64,000 bases of DNA from Phallusia mammillata (GCA_965637545.1 OZ281496.1:22382001-22446000), one strand, 5' to 3'. Positions 34,501 through 58,500 are shown, counted from the first letter of the stretch. Notes: a model not told the origin generated them from the letters alone. Numbers and translations: made by a program.

Positions 34501-37500
34501 GGGTTAGCAATTCTAAACCAATGTCGAAGACAAGAGTATCGCCATAAAAGGCTGAACAGTTGGGTCAGTTGAGTTGCAATTCCTGACCACCTGAAAAGCT
34601 CATGCGCACTTCTACTGGTAGGCGCACCATAAACTGAGAACCACTGATTTAGGCAAATAATAAACATTTAAACAGTAAACGCGTTTTGCTTGCTAATAGT
34701 TCAAAGTCACGAAAAAAGCTGTTGCAATGGACAGAAATTAGGAAATAGTATTCTTCGGACTGTTTTGCAGAAAAACTACACTGAAGATTGGGATTATGAT
34801 AAACAGATGATATATTTTCCTGCTCATATTACCCCTGGTTACGAATCTAGCGCTGAAGTCAAGAAAGTGCAAAGTGACGTAAGTATCATATTTTTGTAAA
34901 TATTTAGTCTTCAAATTTTTTTTTAAATGTTTAGTCTTCAAATGTAAATTCGTCCTTTGTTAGCAGTCTGATATAAATTCAGTTTAGTAAGAATTAAGTT
35001 TATTTTCTTTTAGGCCCAGTATAAGAAGGATCATGAGCAAAACAAGGCCAAAAATACTTTCGACGTCACTGGCACTCAGAGATATGAAGAAATGAAAGCA
35101 ACACACAGCGCCACCTCTGATGTAATACTTTAAGTCGAACTGTATTTAGTTTTATCATATGTGTCTTGTTTTTACTTTGATCGACTCTTCAAGTATGAAC
35201 AATTTTTCCACAACCAATATTGTATACCATGTTAGCCACATCTGTTTGGGACATTTCTGATTGAAAATATTTGATTCTATTTCAGGTCAAATACAAGGAA
35301 GGTTTTCGAAAGAATCAGGGAACTGCCATGCAGATTCCTGAAACTGAAGAGATGGCTCGATCCAAAGAACTGTATCCTGTTCTAAGCAAACAAGCTTATT
35401 CAGAGAAATCCAAGGAGGCACATAAGAATGTCAATGTCGGACCAGGTAATAAAAGCATTGTTAATCATTCCACAAAAACCTATCTAAGTGTTTTATTCAA
35501 ATGTGTAATGTAAGGAAGTTTGATCCAAATTCTAGTGTGTACGTTTCAACAGTCTATTCAAGATTTGGTCAACGTTTGTTTCTGATTTTGCTTTGGTCTT
35601 TAGACAGCAATCGACAGTAGAAACTTTGATACGTAACTTTTTAAAACGGATCATTCTGTGTTTAAAATCGTACTTTCTTTCCAGATATTCAGGAAATAGC
35701 ACACGCAGTTGACACCCAGAAACAGGCGTCAACCAACCAATATAAGATGGACTATAAACAGAACATGGTCGGTAAACCACCAGCTGACCCTACATCAGCC
35801 TACCCAGAACATACCCTGCACAAGAAAATGACTCAGCTTACCAGCAAGGTAGCGTTATGCTCATGAAACTTTGGAACATTTTTACACTGAATACTTACCT
35901 ATCCACACCAGCAAAACGCACTTGTTTTAAATTTTCTGATTTGTGTCTTTTTTGGCCTTTTTTCGCAGGTTTGTGCACAAGCACGCTTTCGATAATGGGT
36001 TTATGTTTGAATAACTATACTCTATAGCAGGGGTCCGCAAATACTTTTTGACGCGACCCTAAAAAAATTGCTCTAAATTCTCGCGACCCAAGCATTTAGT
36101 TAGCATGTAAGTTTGTGGAAAATACTAAACAACTAAATGAGAACCGCATGCTTGCACAGATGCGCTTAATTTATTACATTGTTACATAGACTGTATGTAA
36201 CAGTTACATAGTCATATGTAACAATGTAAAAGCTAATTAAAAGGTTGGAAAAGCCGAAGTTCATTAATGCCGTAGATGCGATACTTATATTCATGGGAAA
36301 TTTAAAATATTTCGCGACCCAGACTAGAAGGTCTCGCGACCCAAATTTGGGTCGCGACCCACTATTTGCGGACCCCTGCTCTATAGTAGTTACCCATTGG
36401 TGTTATACTTGATATTGTCATCTACATGCAATAGTTTTATTTTATTGTACACAAAACGTGAAGGAATAACTTGCTATGTAAAAATCATTTGCATATAATA
36501 TCTTGATCACTAAGGCTTAAAACAAGAAGTTCGGGAGGTTGAACTTGACTCATTTCCATTTCCTCTGCGATCAAATTAGTTTTGAGGTTAAATTTTTATT
36601 CCTGTTCTTTTGTAGCCCGAGTACACCAAGGATTCAGAAAAGTTGCTTCACCGACACCAGCTTCCTGTAGATGCTCCTGAGTTTGTCCGTGCTAAGCAGG
36701 TTGCTCTACAAGCCAGTGATGTAAGTTAAAATATGTGTCGCACTGCATTTTCCATTTAATATTACACAAATTAAATCAGCTCCAACTTTTGTTCTGTGAA
36801 ATTTATTATATAATAGACAATAGTAGATTCTATTTGAATAAGGAAGTAAACAAGTCAGAAATTTTTTAATGGTTTATTATACTGTTGATGTTGAACTTCG
36901 TTCTATATATATGTGCTTTAATTTGCAAGTTAAAGTGTGAAGTATAAATTGTAGGTTTTACTCGAATAAACCGAGCTAAAGTAAACGGTAATTAATGTAA
37001 TCAAAACCCATACAATTTACTGTTTTTACACAGTTTTTGTCGTATATTTTAGATCGAATACAAGAAGCAGAAACAGGAGACAGTGGATCAATATCGTGGT
37101 TATCAGACTTTGGACACACAAGATCACCCAGTTGTACAGCGCGCTGCCCAAGCTGCCCAACTTGCTTCTGAGGTACGTTTTAGTTATTTATCTCCCCATC
37201 TTTAACTCGTTATACTCATTTGAAAATAAATCGTTGCAGAAAGCGTACAAAGAGGATTGGGAGTACGACAAACAAATGATCTATTTCCCTGCTCACATCA
37301 CCCCTGGCTACGAGTCCAGTGCTGACGTCAAAAAAGTTCAGAGTGACGTAAGTAACTGTATTTGTCTATTGCCTGATGGTTATAGGACAGGCGTGTTGTT
37401 TTAGAGCGAGGTTGTTACCAATCTGGTATTTGCTGAACCAATGAGAGTCTATTGTGTTGGATGGTTTGAAGGGGAGTTTTGTAATCATTTTTAGTGACCT

Positions 37501-40500
37501 AGTCAAAACAGCTGCAGTTAAATTTTAATTGGGAGCCCGCGAACTCAATACATCAACATTTTACAGAAAAGGTGTTCTTTTTTACAAATACAAGTCAAGG
37601 ATTACTGCCTTGGAGCTTTAAAATCTAAAAAAAAACGCCATTTGAACATATTAAAACCAGACTTGGCTGAAAGTTGAGATAAATGTAGTACATTATTCGA
37701 TCAAGCCGGGTTTATTTAGTTGATAGAGCGCCAGCCCCAGCTATCCTGCTGTCGTGGGTTCGAATACCACCGCAGGCGAGAATTTTCTAGATTATACTTT
37801 GCCATGTGGAAATGTTTGAATGACCGCCAGTAAGTCTGGGGTGCTTTAAGTGTTTAAATTCTAATCACCTACTGATAAAATTGACTGTTTTTTTCCAGGT
37901 CAGCTACAAGAAAGCATTCGAGAAAACCAAAGCACGCAATGAGTTTAAACCAACGGACACAGAGCGCTACAAAGAGATGAAGCAAATGGACAATGTTGCA
38001 TCTGATGTAAGACTTTATTTGTGGAATTAATTATTAGCAAAACTTTTCTATACGTTGCGACATCTATTTTAGCTTATAGCAGCATGTTTGGGATAAATTC
38101 CATAATGCCTGATGACAAAATTTGAATGTACGTTTAAATATACCTAAATCATTACATGTGAAACGAGTTAGTTTTTGTTTTTTGGTCAGAAACAGTATAT
38201 CACTATAACTTATCTATCGTAAAATGCTTAAATATCTGCAACATCAATCAGTGACTCTGTCAAAATTGTAGCAATATATTTTGTCTTCATTTATTAATTA
38301 TAACTTTAGATCAAATAATGAATTTCCTGTCGTTTTTTATCGATTCACATGTAACCCCCTTTTTCGTCTCCAGGTTAAGTACAAGGAGGAATACGAGAAA
38401 AACAAGGGCAAGGGATCAAGTATTTTGGAGACGCACGAGATGGTGCTGTCGAAAGAATTGCGACCCGTGCAAAGCAAGAAGTTGTATACGGAACAGTCGA
38501 AGGAGATGCATAAGAACGTCAACGTTAACAAGGGTAACCATCGTCGGTGTTTTTGATGCTCGTAGTTCGGCCAAGCAGTTGCACAAACTGATCCGAGCAT
38601 TAAAATTACATGTTCATGGCCTGCTAACATACGAAACCGGTGACGTTAGGGATCTTGGAAAGCTAAAAAACTAGGGTTGTATTTGGAATTTATGTGACGT
38701 CACAATGAACCGAGCATTAACATGTAATGCTGAGTATTCAACCAAAATATGAAATTTGCAGTTTTGGCCTATCCCTAGTACTTGCAATGGTATTCGAACA
38801 CAGGCGTAAGAATACTTAACAGCGAGGGCAAAATATAGTTTTGTTTAGTTCTTTTTTTGTAAAGGTGAGATAAAATTTCGACCCTAAAACCGTTTCGATT
38901 GAAATGTTCACCTGGCTTAATCTGTATGTAATTAGATGGCCAGGAGATCGCTCTTGCTGTTTCATCTCAACAACTTGCTTCACCTGGTCCTTACCGCAAG
39001 GAATATAAGCAGAAGATGGTCGGTAAAGGACCCACAGATCCAGCAGTGGCTTACCCAGAGCATGATCTTCATAGAAAGGCGTCTAACCTTGCTAGCAACG
39101 TAAGTTGTGTTATAAGTTATGACATAATGTGTATAGTTTATCATATTATGTACACGCTCAAGACCTGTTTGAAAAGTCGTCCATAACAAAAACTTTAAAA
39201 AAAAGTTTAAAGAAAAGGAGAAAGATAAAATCACTTTTTTACCTAATAAAGCACGAGGTCTTTCGTAAATCAAGTAAAGTAAAAAGAAAACGTAAAATAC
39301 TTTAACCTCAAGTCACAAAGAAGACTGTTATGCAGCATTAATACATCTTCTTTTCACAAGGCTGACTATCAGAAGGAAGCTGCAAAAAACATGGCTCGCC
39401 ATCAACTGCCAGTTGATGCTCCTGAGTTTATTCGAGCCAAGGAGGCAGCGAAAAATGCTAGTGACGTAAGTTAACATAAACAAGTTAAAATTTTACGCAA
39501 CTAACGTACTGTACACAATTTTTTATTAACTTAAAGTTTATTTCTGAGTTGTTGTTGAGTTTCTTTAACGTTGCAGTTTTTGAAACAAACATTTGTTTGA
39601 TCAAAAAGTGTATCTTGTTTACAGCTTGAATACCAGAAGCAAAGGAATGAAGTGATTGCCAACTACAGAGGTTTCCAAACTATGGACAGCTCCGAACATC
39701 CCATCGTTCAACACGGGATTAAGGCAGCTGAATTGGCATCAAACGTTAGTGAACAGTTTGCATATCTTTTATACTGTTACCTACCCATTATCATTGCATT
39801 TGCATTAACACAGACAGTAACGGTAAAGTGGTGAATCAAACAAATTTAAATAAATGCACTGTCTATTTCAAAAAGGTGTATATATGTTTTACTCAAAGAC
39901 TAATAAATACCGGAATAAATAACAACTGATTGACTAATTTTGAAGCACCGGGCTACCGTTCTTGTACTGAATGTTGTTCAATTGAAAAATGGTTGTTAAT
40001 AATTCAAACGTCTATTTTGTGTTTGTTTTAACCTTTTCGCTTAATTAAACAAAAATACCCACTGAAGGTTGTCTAAACCAGTGGTCGGCAACCGCCGGTC
40101 CGCGGCCCGGTACCGGTCCGCGACGAGTTGGTTACCGGGCCGTATAATTTTCAGGTTAAATGCTACAAAACATTTTGCCCATGTATCCCGGGGTTGATAA
40201 ACTAATTTAACGTTTTTATCTCTAAATATTTGTAGTTTTTTTTGAAGACCGGTCCGCGATAAAATTTCACCTTCTAAAGCGGTCCGCAGTGCAAAAAAGG
40301 TTGCCTATACCCCTTGTCTAAACAAGTCGAAATACGCCCCAGACATACGCATTTCGAGTATTTTGTACGTAAAGAAATCGCTTTCAATTTTTATTATGCT
40401 GCTAGGTTTTGCGTTTTAATCCACCGTTATTGTGTTATGTACAGACGCTATATACTGAGGACTGGGATTATGACAAACAAATGATTTACTTTCCTGCTCA

Positions 40501-55500: not shown

Positions 55501-58500
55501 AGTATCTCTCCGTAAAAGAGTTTACCTTTACCAAATGTTTCCGTATTTGAAAATAAACGTTTGCAAACTTGTTCTGTAACCCCTATAGATTGGCTCCGAG
55601 AACAAGTACAAACACAAGTTCAACAAAGAAATGGTTGGCAAAGCTCCGAATGACGTCACAATTTCACATCCCGAGTATGATCTGGCGAAAAAAGTCTCCC
55701 GTATGGCAAGCAAGGTAAGTCCTAATCCTTCGACATAAAGTGATCCCAATAAGAATAAATTTAACTTTATAGGAAAATTGAAGTTTTTTAAGCTAATGAG
55801 AGAGTTATAAAACTGAAAACTTGACTTTTTCAGGCCAAATTTCACATCGTTTTGGTTTGTTTAAAACTATAAAAGAGTAAATCAAATGCATAATAAAGGC
55901 CTTAGTTAAAATAGAACCATGCACTTTTTTCTATTTTACTACTGTTTTGTGCAGAGCGAGTACGTGAAAGATGCAGAGAAGATAAAGCATCGTCATAATC
56001 TTCCTGTTGATTACCCGGAGTTTGTCAGGGCTCGAGAATGCGCTAAAAACGCCAGCGATGTACGTACTTAAAATAATAAGCCTTATTCAACATTGGTATC
56101 AAGTCTCCATTTAGGTTTTTGGTTCAGACTAGCCCAGTGGTTCGTAAACCCGCGATTACATTATTTTTTTGTAATGTTACTCACGTAATCTTTCTCTGAC
56201 GTCATAGTTATTTTTGTAGGGTGGTTTAGAAATTTATCTGTTTTTTTCAAGGTTAAAAATAACAAGGGCTAAGAACCACTAATCTAGTCGTTACCAGACA
56301 CACTAAATATCTTAAACTGCTAACTTTCTCTTACTTACAACAACAGGTGTATGTGTACGACGGGCGTTTTACAACAATGGTGTTTATTTAGGCGGAATAC
56401 CAAAAGCAAAAGAAGCAGACGATCGAAAAATACCGCGGCTTTCAGACAATGGATAGCAAAGACCATCCCGTTGTACAACACGGAATCCGAGTTGCCGATC
56501 TCATTTCTCACGTATGTGTTGCCAGTTTTGATGCTTTCCACATAATTTCATTTGGGATTTAATTTTAGATAGTAGAAATTTAACTGTGGAAGCTGTTTCA
56601 GTGCAGTTGTTGAGCAAGCTGTAGACAAGACATAAGCTGTATTGGCCAGTGTAGCCACCTAACGGCACTCCAGTTTTTGGGAATAACAGGCTAAAAGTCA
56701 TGCCTTACCTATTCTTTTGTGATTCAATTGTTGCTTTAACACATGATAAATTTTTTAAATTTTATATACTATTATTTTTCCATTAATAGGAACTAACATT
56801 ATCACTTGTCATTTATTACAGAGCAAATACATTGAAGATTATATGATCGACCGCAACATTGTATATTATCCAGTACATTTGACACCAGGATACGAAGCCG
56901 CAACGAAAGCTAGTCAATTCCAAAGCGAGGTGCGTGACTGAAATTATTACCTTTATTTCGCCGAGGGCCGTTTAAAAATTGACGAGTGTGGGAAGTATAG
57001 TATTTATTGAATCTTCTAATCCCTGTCAATGGGAGTATTAGAAAAAAACTTCAAACATTCAAGTTTGTAATTCTGTTTGAATGTGTTATTTTCTTAAGTT
57101 TTTCTTATTGCCTGATCGAGTACTAAAAGCGCCCCTTTAAATAGCGCTTCTAAATTTTGGGGCCTATGGTTTGTCAAATATTTTGAGCTCAGTATGTTTA
57201 TCTTTCATATTTTATTGTGGACCTTGGTATTGGTTGATGTGAAACCTTGTTTTTCTTTAGCTGAAGTACAAGGAAGGTTACAAGAAAGGCCAGACCGATT
57301 TCCGCTTTGATCCAACACAAACTGACATGTACAAAACTGTGAAGGATAACCAAAACGCTTTGAACGATGTAAGTGGCTTGGAATAAATCAAGACGGACAA
57401 ATCTGGTTAATCGCATATCCATTTTGCCAAGCTTTTTATGCAATTAACCAGCACTGTTTTTCATAAGCTTGAAATTCCCAATTCCATGCCAATAAAAGGA
57501 ACATGCGATTAATTAACCCTATATTTACCTATGTTCCAAGTCTTTTTGAATACATTCCCGTGATGCATCCATGTCCTCTCATTCTGGGTTTAAATATGTG
57601 TTTCTATTATTCTCACAACATAGTTCGATACATCAATGTCACAATACAGACTTCGAACTGTTAATATCATTGGAATTAATAAATGTATTTTTTAGCTATC
57701 ATAGGCTTTGTGTTTATTTTACAGAAAGCTTACAAGGAAGACAGCAAGAAGACCTTGGAAACAGGTTTCACGCCTTCAGCTCAAACTCAAGAGATGGAAA
57801 TATCCAACAAGCTGAAACCTCTTGCACCGAGCGAGTATCAGAAACGCGCCAAGGATCTTCTTCACAAATATCATCTTAACGTCGAGCTGCCGGTAAAATT
57901 TCTTTATGAAAATTTATGTGACCGTTTATGTGCTTAATTGGTATCAGCTTTACCTGTGACATAACTTTTATTTCTCTTTCTGCATTTTTTTGTCTCAATC
58001 AAATGTTTTTATGTAAATGACACCTTGCTATTGCTCTATGAAATTGCCTCTCGGCCTTTTACGTATTTTTCAGCACAGATCGAAAAACTCGTGTGACTGT
58101 GATATCTTTGTGCTTGTTTATAGATACCGATGATGCTGTAAAGGCGAAATATATACTTTTTAAATTCATAAGCATGAATGACCAAATGCGTTCATAAATT
58201 TGAAGTCTTATGACTAATTCGTTTTTGGATTTCGTTATTTATCGATAGTTTGTTGTTAATCCCATTTTTGGATGTGTTGAATTCGTGAACTTTAATTATT
58301 TATTTGCTTACCCTTTATCTTACATAATATGTTGCTGCTTCAGGAAATCACACATGCAGTGTGTTTATCACAACTCGTGTCCAAAAACAAATACACGAGT
58401 GACTACAATACCAAGATCAAGGGCGCGGCTCCATCCGACCTCGCGAACTCGTACCCTGAGTATCTTCATGCACGGAATGTCACCAAACAAACCAGCAAGG

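What the first reader, a model, noticed from the sequence alone, without database searches (positions are those of the whole stretch)
36827..36872. Perfect tunicate spliced-leader 16-mer inside a nebulin intron, laid out like an SL RNA with a crippled donor
Seen: 36827-36842 reads ATTCTATTTGAATAAG on the sense strand of nebulin intron 36721-37052. It is immediately preceded by AG and followed by GAAGT AAACAAGTCAGA AATTTTTTAATGG. Known (from memory): this 16-mer is the trans-spliced leader of Ciona, donated by a short SL RNA of about 46 nt with a GU donor and a U-rich Sm-like site. A rough hand estimate of a chance match in 128 kb of ~36% GC sequence is about 3e-4. Inference: this is a dispersed or retroposed SL RNA copy. 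GAAGT is GTAAGT minus one T, and an intact AG|SL|GT here would be a 16-nt frameshifting poison exon in a giant muscle gene, so losing the donor would be favoured. Alternatively it is the 5' end of a retrocopied trans-spliced mRNA (a relict SL). Either way it suggests SL-bearing sequence is mobilised in this genome.
Basis: partly seen in the sequence, partly recalled or inferred. Interest (0 to 1): 0.78.

Follow-up and report, generated by a model that had tools for sequence, protein, structure and literature searches.

The report
Orphan spliced-leader copy in nebulin intron
An exact copy of this sea squirt's 16-base spliced leader sits, apparently inert, in an intron of a nebulin-repeat gene; it is one of roughly 600-1000 scattered leader copies that look like leftovers of leader-capped RNAs copied back into DNA, and it is not a leader-RNA gene.

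Summary
The 16-mer is exact at 36827-36842 on the sense strand of a confirmed intron (36721-37052) of a nebulin-repeat gene, and it equals the published Ciona spliced leader (SL). It is not chance: about 0.8 exact copies are expected per genome, and 3860 are found. About 2890 of these are true SL RNA genes in a 553-bp tandem array 11 Mb away on the same chromosome. The other 600-970 or so are dispersed.

In a sample of 70 independent dispersed copies, the base just before the SL is G in 56%. The gene has C there. An extra G is the usual mark of reverse transcription through a cap, and the window copy has it.

The 30 nt after the SL resemble this species' SL RNA intron only marginally (p about 0.04-0.06) and lack its hairpin. 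They also do not fit the main SL-headed repeat family, which is hammerhead-like. They are single-copy in the genome.

One RNA contig splices the intron out whole. DNA contigs from three studies all carry the copy unchanged.

Verdict: an ordinary, fixed, orphan SL relic. This scan has already reported SL-headed retrocopies elsewhere in this genome.

The parts
36826..36826 (+). G immediately 5' of the SL; probably the extra G added when reverse transcriptase reads through the RNA cap
   Evidence: G at -1 in 39 of 70 independent dispersed SL copies (binomial p 1.7e-12 against 18% G) and in 23 of 46 orphan copies. The SL RNA gene has C at -1. Position -2 shows no excess of A.
36827..36842 (+). Exact 16-nt spliced-leader sequence (orphan genomic copy)
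   Evidence: Identical to the published Ciona SL and to the exon of about 2890 tandem SL RNA genes in this genome. Unchanged in DNA contigs from three studies.
36843..36872 (+). 30 nt after the SL, origin unassigned. Contains a shifted GT at 36846-36847 and a T6 run at 36862-36867.
   Evidence: Single-copy in the genome. Marginal resemblance to the SL RNA intron (p 0.036-0.059). No hit to the hammerhead-like family HMM even at E 1000. Position-weight-matrix p = 0.011, or 0.05 given a GAA start. Resemblance to the class D tail vanishes against an A-rich null (p 0.19-0.33). No SL-RNA-like fold.
36721..37052 (+). Host intron of a nebulin-repeat gene, removed as one piece
   Evidence: An RNA-type contig joins 36720 to 37053 with GT..AG ends; no junction at 36826/36827 or 36845/36846 was listed. 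The flanking exon matches the Pfam Nebulin repeat.

Best explanation
The feature is an inert, fixed relic of a spliced-leader-capped RNA whose 5' end was reverse-transcribed and integrated into an intron of a nebulin-repeat gene. It consists of one cap-derived G plus the complete 16-nt SL. It is not an SL RNA gene and takes no part in splicing of the host gene. It belongs to a genome-wide population of roughly 600-970 exact dispersed SL copies, many of which head retroposed repeat families. Shown here: its SL origin, the G signature at population level, the absence of SL-RNA features, normal splicing of the intron, and its presence in three DNA data sets. Inferred: the integration route, and how far the inserted piece extends past the SL. 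Because the SL is perfect and dispersed copies are on average only about 8% diverged, the flank should be close to its original state. So either the insert is little more than the SL itself, or its parent transcript has no other copy in the assembly.
For: The 16-mer is exact. About 0.83 copies are expected per genome and 3860 are found, with 0 for the reversed control. 2887 are array-type SL+GTAAGCAT, which leaves up to about 970 dispersed copies. Chromosome C1 alone has 86 in 36 Mb. Copies with exactly one mismatch number about 1009, against a control of 51 at up to one mismatch. The 1-mismatch to exact ratio implies roughly 8% mean divergence. G at -1 in 39 of 70 copies, p 1.7e-12, while the gene has C there. 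The window copy has this G. The base after the SL is G or A in 59 of 70 copies, as at exon starts. Several families begin exactly at SL base 1. An RNA-type contig removes the whole intron. DNA contigs X1, X3 and X4, from three studies, cover 36805-36872 without differences, although X4 differs elsewhere in the intron.
Against: No poly(A) tail, no convincing target-site duplication (the best direct repeat is a 9-mer in AT-rich sequence) and no parent sequence elsewhere in the genome. The retroposition of this particular copy is therefore inferred from the population, not shown. No empty allele was seen. Only contigs, not raw reads, and only one RNA-type run could be laid, so rare use as a mini-exon is not excluded.
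Confidence: 0.6

Rival explanations
1. Retropseudogene of the unspliced SL RNA (SL exon plus intron-like part) whose GT donor was later crippled.
For: After the SL comes G-AAG, against GTAAG in the gene. A T6 run lies 19 nt after the SL, against 26 nt in the gene. The anchored alignment to the real SL RNA intron gives p = 0.036 (30 nt) and 0.059 (45 nt).
Against: The alignment needs many gaps and matches only about half of its aligned positions, next to a 16/16 perfect SL, which neutral decay of one block would not give. No ACUCC/GGAGU hairpin. Copies with a clear SL-RNA intron start (GTAAGCAT) are rare outside the array: one of 86 on C1. Two other unrelated families gave similarly marginal p values, so an A-rich flank finds weak matches easily.
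Confidence: 0.12
2. Decayed member of one of the SL-bearing repeat families. One candidate is the hammerhead-like family (SL, 3-6 nt, CTGANGA, hairpin, GAAA, TATATAT), which makes up most SL+GAA copies. The other is 'class D', about 240 nt of conserved sequence, then the SL, then about 20 nt.
For: 92 copies genome-wide start SL+GAA, and most of them are hammerhead-like. The window flank matches a GAAGTGAAGATGTCA variant at 12 of 15 positions. Position-weight-matrix p = 0.011, or 0.05 given GAA. The best upstream and downstream local matches are to class D and class A members (p 0.053 and 0.105).
Against: nhmmer with the family model finds a true SL-less copy elsewhere in the window (58125-58161, E 1.7e-6) but nothing at 36843-36912, even at E 1000. 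MAFFT cannot place the flank in register. The core has 3 of 6 defined bases wrong and there is no helix II. The class D upstream HMM gives no hit. The class D tail similarity disappears with an A-rich null. A perfect SL argues against heavy decay.
Confidence: 0.13
3. DNA-level capture of a short piece of the SL gene array, for example filler DNA at a repaired break or gene conversion.
For: The array of about 2890 units lies on the same chromosome, 11 Mb away. The insert may be very short.
Against: The gene has C, not G, before the SL and GT after it. Neither gene flank is present in the window copy.
Confidence: 0.05
4. Chance match in AT-rich intron sequence.
For: The 16-mer is AT-rich and lies in an AT-rich intron.
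Against: About 0.83 exact copies are expected in the whole genome, against 600-970 dispersed copies observed. The reversed control gives 0. The prior that any one dispersed copy is chance is therefore about 0.1%.
Confidence: 0.01
5. Functional element of the host gene: a cryptic 16- or 19-nt mini-exon (poison exon) or an intronic regulatory site.
For: AG precedes the SL and a GT lies at 36846-36847 (GAA|GTAAAC). The copy is identical in three DNA data sets.
Against: The one RNA-type contig splices 36720 to 37053 directly. The stretch before the AG is A-rich, not pyrimidine-rich. Identity over 76 nt is expected anyway at about 1-2% haplotype divergence.
Confidence: 0.03

Closest known systems
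Relict spliced leaders and SL-tagged processed retrocopies, as described in dinoflagellates (Slamovits and Keeling 2008, cited from memory)
   Same: A complete SL stands in genomic DNA where only a mature or capped SL-bearing RNA could have put it. Some families in this genome even carry tandem partial SLs (L004 and L006).
   Different: This copy has no recognisable cDNA body, poly(A) tail or target-site duplication. The organism is an ascidian. No paper in the searched library describes this for tunicates.
Ascidian SL RNA gene (C. intestinalis: 46-nt RNA, Sm motif AGCUUUGG, about 670 tandem copies; PMC7986045)
   Same: The same 16-nt exon sequence.
   Different: No GT directly after the SL, no intron hairpin, and no gene-type upstream sequence. 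This genome's own genes use a different intron part from C. intestinalis (no AGCTTTGG) and sit in a 553-bp tandem array.
SL-headed hammerhead-like short repeats of this genome (my class A; scan notes s1-375378 and s1-351708); compare the minimal hammerheads of Penelope-like elements (Cervera and de la Pena 2014; Lunse et al. 2017, cited from memory)
   Same: The SL is followed by GAA, the commonest start of that family.
   Different: The CTGANGA core, helix II and the GAAA-TATATAT part are not recognisable, and the family HMM gives no hit.
5' extra G of LINE-mediated retrocopies (reverse transcription of the cap; established for mammalian L1, cited from memory)
   Same: One untemplated G directly before the first transcribed base.
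   Different: Here it precedes a trans-spliced leader rather than a transcription start. It is shown only statistically, across copies.

Membership tests
Functional SL RNA gene | SL exon immediately followed by a GT donor | tested here: not met
   The window has AAG|GAAGT, while array genes have AAG|GTAAGC. A GT exists 3 nt later.
Functional SL RNA gene | Intron-like part with a hairpin and a U-rich Sm-like site, as in this species' gene | tested here: not met
   The gene folds its ACUCC/GGAGU hairpin. The window RNA has no such hairpin (z +0.61). Only a T6 run is shared.
Functional SL RNA gene | Gene-type upstream sequence and tandem 553-bp unit | tested here: not met
   The window upstream is AT-rich intron ending in ..tag, while the gene has ..caaaacggc. 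The intron is single-copy.
Unspliced SL RNA retropseudogene | Downstream sequence homologous to the SL RNA intron part | tested here: inconclusive
   Anchored alignment p 0.036 (30 nt) and 0.059 (45 nt), heavily gapped.
SL-tagged retrocopy of a trans-spliced RNA | Complete SL at the 5' edge, with a cap-type extra G | tested here: met
   G at 36826. Population excess of G at -1, p 1.7e-12.
SL-tagged retrocopy of a trans-spliced RNA | Body matching a parent gene or element | tested here: not met
   The intron and the 118 nt after the SL match only themselves in the genome at E up to 10.
SL-tagged retrocopy of a trans-spliced RNA | Poly(A) tail and target-site duplication | tested here: inconclusive
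   No A tract. The best direct repeat is TTTATTATA, a 9-mer in AT-rich DNA, roughly 0.2 expected by chance (my own rough estimate).
SL-headed hammerhead-like repeat (class A) | CTGANGA core 3-6 nt after the SL, covarying hairpin, GAAA, TATATAT | tested here: not met
   The core has 3 of 6 defined bases wrong. nhmmer gives no hit at E up to 1000, while a true copy at 58125-58161 scores E 1.7e-6. MAFFT places the flank out of register.
Class D repeat (SL internal, about 240 nt conserved upstream) | Conserved upstream ..gtttattaat..ctgtttatg and tail g.aataaaataagtt | tested here: not met
   The upstream HMM gives no hit. Tail similarity p 0.19-0.33 against an A-rich null.

The most novel reading that the evidence does not exclude
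The copy is an 'SL-only footprint'. A cap-proximal cDNA of about 17-20 nt (extra G plus SL, perhaps plus a few bases) was made by internally primed reverse transcription, or captured at a DNA break, and was left in otherwise unique DNA. If many of the orphan copies are like this, the genome would hold a so far undescribed class of micro-insertions that record the 5' ends of trans-spliced RNAs. About half of the sampled dispersed copies scored as orphans under my rough sorting (46 of 91; a few are mis-sorted class A members).
Probability: 0.3. Interest if true: 0.5.

Novelty: new member of a known kind. Interest (0 to 1): 0.3.

Why it matters
On its own this copy matters little. It is inert and is spliced out with its intron. 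Its value is as one data point in a genome-wide picture: an ascidian genome with hundreds of dispersed SL copies that carry a cap-type extra G. These copies show that trans-spliced RNAs, including transposon RNAs, were reverse-transcribed to their very 5' ends and integrated. They mark RNA-derived DNA precisely and could be used to date retroposition and to find retrogenes. They also warn annotators that an SL in genomic DNA is not evidence of an SL RNA gene. The paper library I searched held no description of this in tunicates. The scan has already reported it at other places in this genome.

Tried and rejected
1. A search for a C. intestinalis-type SL RNA gene (SL, GT, then AGCTTTGG) found 0 in this genome. 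The species uses another intron part.
2. Rfam scans of the SL gene unit and of ten class A loci gave no SL RNA or hammerhead family hit, only spurious miRNA-like hits on a palindrome.
3. Class A membership was tested four ways, all negative or marginal: anchored pairwise alignment (p 0.1-0.4), position weight matrix (p 0.011, or 0.05 given GAA), nhmmer (no hit) and MAFFT (out of register).
4. Class D membership: BLAST gave 74% identity over 69 nt including the SL. The upstream-only HMM and a composition-matched test did not support it.
5. By eye I saw a second motif at 36879-36912 (ACTGTTGATG ... TATATATAT). nhmmer did not pick it up, so I dropped it.
6. The target-site duplication search was inconclusive.
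7. I looked for an empty allele in DNA contigs from three studies and saw none.
8. ARAGORN found no tRNA in 35900-38000, although 37750-37790 has a tRNA-like GGTTCGAAT box.
9. Two ORFs in an interruption of the SL array had no Pfam domain.
Exons were scanned one by one.

Full report
**Observation.** The window reads ATTCTATTTGAATAAG at 36827-36842 on the + strand. It is preceded by ..aatagtAG and followed by GAAGTAAACAAGTCAGAAATTTTTTAATGG. This is the only match in the window at up to 2 mismatches; 100 shuffles give a mean of 0.08. The 16-mer is the published spliced leader (SL) of Ciona intestinalis. That species' SL RNA is 46 nt long, has the Sm motif AGCUUUGG and has at least 670 gene copies (PMC7986045).

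The host intron is real. An RNA-type contig (run X7) joins 36720 to 37053 with GT..AG ends and continues 37170 to 37238. Exon 36616-36720 matches the Pfam Nebulin repeat (E 1e-4, 22.5 bits against a cut-off of 20.1).

**Is it chance?** From base composition, 2.2e-4 exact copies are expected per window and 0.83 per genome. The window's own genome has 240 Mb, and the window lies at C3:22.38 Mb. It holds 3860 exact copies, against 0 for the reversed control. Chance is excluded.

**The real SL RNA genes of this species.**
- 2887 copies read SL+GTAAGCAT.
- Most sit in a 553-bp tandem array at C3:11.1 Mb.
- One unit reads ..caaaacggc|SL|GTAAGCATCATACTCCTCGGAGTAACTTTTTTCCAC...
- The RNA folds an ACUCC/GGAGU hairpin just before the U run.
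- There is no C. intestinalis-type AGCTTTGG gene.

So this species uses the same SL exon as Ciona with a different intron part. From memory, and unchecked, C. savignyi has SL gene repeats of about 552 and 575 bp.

**The dispersed copies.** Subtracting the array type leaves at most about 970 dispersed exact copies. Chromosome C1 has 86 in 36 Mb, which scales to roughly 570 genome-wide. About 1009 further copies have exactly one mismatch, against a control of 51 at up to one mismatch. The 1-mismatch to exact ratio implies a mean divergence of roughly 8%.

I fetched all 86 C1 copies and five from C2 with their flanks. After merging copies that share upstream sequence, 70 independent copies remain.
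- The base before the SL is G in 39 of them (56%; p 1.7e-12 against 18% G). Position -2 shows no excess of A.
- The SL gene has C before the SL. The G is therefore not copied from the gene.
- An untemplated 5' G is what reverse transcription through a cap leaves. This is established for LINE-mediated retrocopies; I cite it from memory.
- The base after the SL is G or A in 59 of 70, as at exon starts.

The copies fall into classes:
- **Class A.** The SL is joined 3-6 nt before CTGANGA, then a hairpin of variable sequence, then GAAA and TATATAT. Homology starts exactly at SL base 1 and runs 50-130 nt.
  - The layout matches a minimal hammerhead ribozyme. RNAalifold finds the hairpin, with some compensatory pairs, but Rfam gives no hammerhead hit.
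  - Two earlier notes of this scan (s1-375378, s1-351708) gave me the hammerhead lead. I checked it only this far.
- **Classes B to E.** In these the SL lies inside a longer conserved repeat.
- **Orphans.** About half of the sample has no shared flank under my rough sorting (a few are mis-sorted class A members). Among these 46 copies, G at -1 is again 50%.

**What the window copy is not.**
- *An SL RNA gene.* It has no GT directly after the SL, no hairpin (z +0.61) and no gene-type upstream sequence.
- *A convincing unspliced SL RNA pseudogene.* An alignment anchored at the SL end gives p = 0.036 (30 nt) and 0.059 (45 nt). It needs many gaps, and only about half of the aligned positions match. 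A 16/16 perfect SL beside such a flank does not fit neutral decay of one inserted block.
- *A recognisable class A member.*
  - Anchored pairwise tests give p 0.1-0.4.
  - A position weight matrix gives p 0.011, or 0.05 given the GAA start.
  - nhmmer with the family model finds nothing at 36843-36912 even at E 1000, while it finds a true SL-less copy at 58125-58161 with E 1.7e-6.
  - MAFFT puts the flank out of register.
- *A class D member.* BLAST suggested similarity. An upstream-only HMM gives no hit, and the tail similarity vanishes against an A-rich null (p 0.19-0.33).

Three unrelated comparisons each gave marginal p values. The A-rich flank finds weak matches easily.

The whole intron, and the 118 nt after the SL, match only themselves in the genome at E up to 10. 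There is no A tail, and the best direct repeat (TTTATTATA) is within chance for AT-rich DNA.

**State in the population and in RNA.** DNA contigs of runs X1, X3 and X4, from three studies, cover 36805-36872 with no difference. X1 may be the assembly's own sample. X4 differs at six other places between 36986 and 37091, five of them inside the intron. So the copy is older than that haplotype split, and no empty allele was seen. The one RNA-type contig removes the intron whole, and no junction at 36826/36827 or 36845/36846 was listed. Only contigs, not raw reads, could be laid, so rare isoforms are not excluded.

**Mechanism.** The best reading is a fixed, inert relic of an SL-capped RNA whose 5' end was reverse-transcribed and integrated: a cap-derived G followed by the SL.
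- *Shown:* SL origin, the G signature across the population, absence of SL-gene features, normal splicing, and presence in three data sets.
- *Inferred:* the integration route and the length of the insert.

Because the SL is perfect, the flank should be near its original state. Either the insert is hardly more than the SL (a cap-proximal cDNA fragment made by internal priming or captured at a break), or its parent has no other copy in the assembly.

It is not supported.
- GT after the SL is enriched among dispersed copies (16 of 70 against about 6% expected, p 1.8e-6).
- A GT is still present 3 nt downstream (GAA|GTAAAC).
- The sequence before the AG is A-rich, which makes a poor acceptor.

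**Comparison and novelty.** The closest known cases are the relict SLs of dinoflagellate retrocopies and the extra 5' G of LINE-mediated retrocopies, both cited from memory. I found no paper on SL-headed retrocopies in tunicates in the library. This scan has already reported SL-headed LINEs, retrogenes and hammerhead repeats at other places in this genome, and two other orphan SLs in introns. This copy is one more member, and a poorly informative one.

**Verdict.** The general idea, that SL-bearing sequence is mobilised, is supported. The specific SL-RNA layout is not. Interest is low to moderate.

Noticed in passing
window 58124-58210 (+): A copy of the hammerhead-like family without the SL. 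ATACCGATGATGCTGTAAAGGCGAAATATATAC.. follows directly on a splice-acceptor-like cttgtttatAG (nhmmer E 1.7e-6). It looks like the unspliced source form. The SL-headed copies elsewhere start at exactly this point, which fits trans-splicing at this AG.
   Followed up: partly
G000:C3:11.108-11.193 Mb (L062, L063): The SL RNA gene array (553-bp units; about 2890 copies genome-wide) is broken every 10-30 units by gaps of about 4.7-5.1 kb between SL positions. One such interruption (L063) holds ORFs of 206 and 536 aa with no Pfam domain at E up to 0.001.
   Followed up: partly
L004, L006, L121 (C1:1154677, C1:2181258, C2:846102): A repeat family with conserved upstream sequence carries the exact SL followed by one or two partial SL copies (for example SL+TCTATTTGAATAAG). 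This resembles the stacked relict leaders of dinoflagellates and hints at repeated rounds of trans-splicing and retroposition.
   Followed up: no
L007, L081, L086 (C1:2319418, C1:17160431, C1:22998372): Some hammerhead-like SL copies sit in perfect inverted repeats: the reverse complement of the flank, sometimes with part of the SL, stands just upstream. These fold-back arrangements gave spurious miRNA hits in Rfam.
   Followed up: no
L103, L024, L092 (C1:32352315, C1:5221364, C1:29188483): Here the SL is followed almost at once by an A run (SL+C+A10, SL+9 nt+A7, SL+GC+A6). These may be retrocopies of extremely short SL-capped polyadenylated RNAs, or the product of template switches from a poly(A) tail to the SL.
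   Followed up: no
window 36001-36402 and 37743-37800+: Two very high-copy repeats lie in neighbouring introns; contig depth rises by a factor of 100-1000. The second has a tRNA-like GGTTCGAAT box, which suggests a tRNA-derived SINE, but ARAGORN calls no tRNA. One X3 contig joins G+SL+GAAG (21 nt) to sequence like 37752 onward, so an SL-headed copy of that repeat may exist elsewhere.
   Followed up: partly
L009-L014 (C1:2.628-2.691 Mb): A segmentally duplicated block with about 5.9-kb spacing carries an SL-headed hammerhead-like copy at the same position in each unit. That copy was therefore amplified by DNA duplication, not by new insertions. Counts of dispersed copies overstate independent events.
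   Followed up: no
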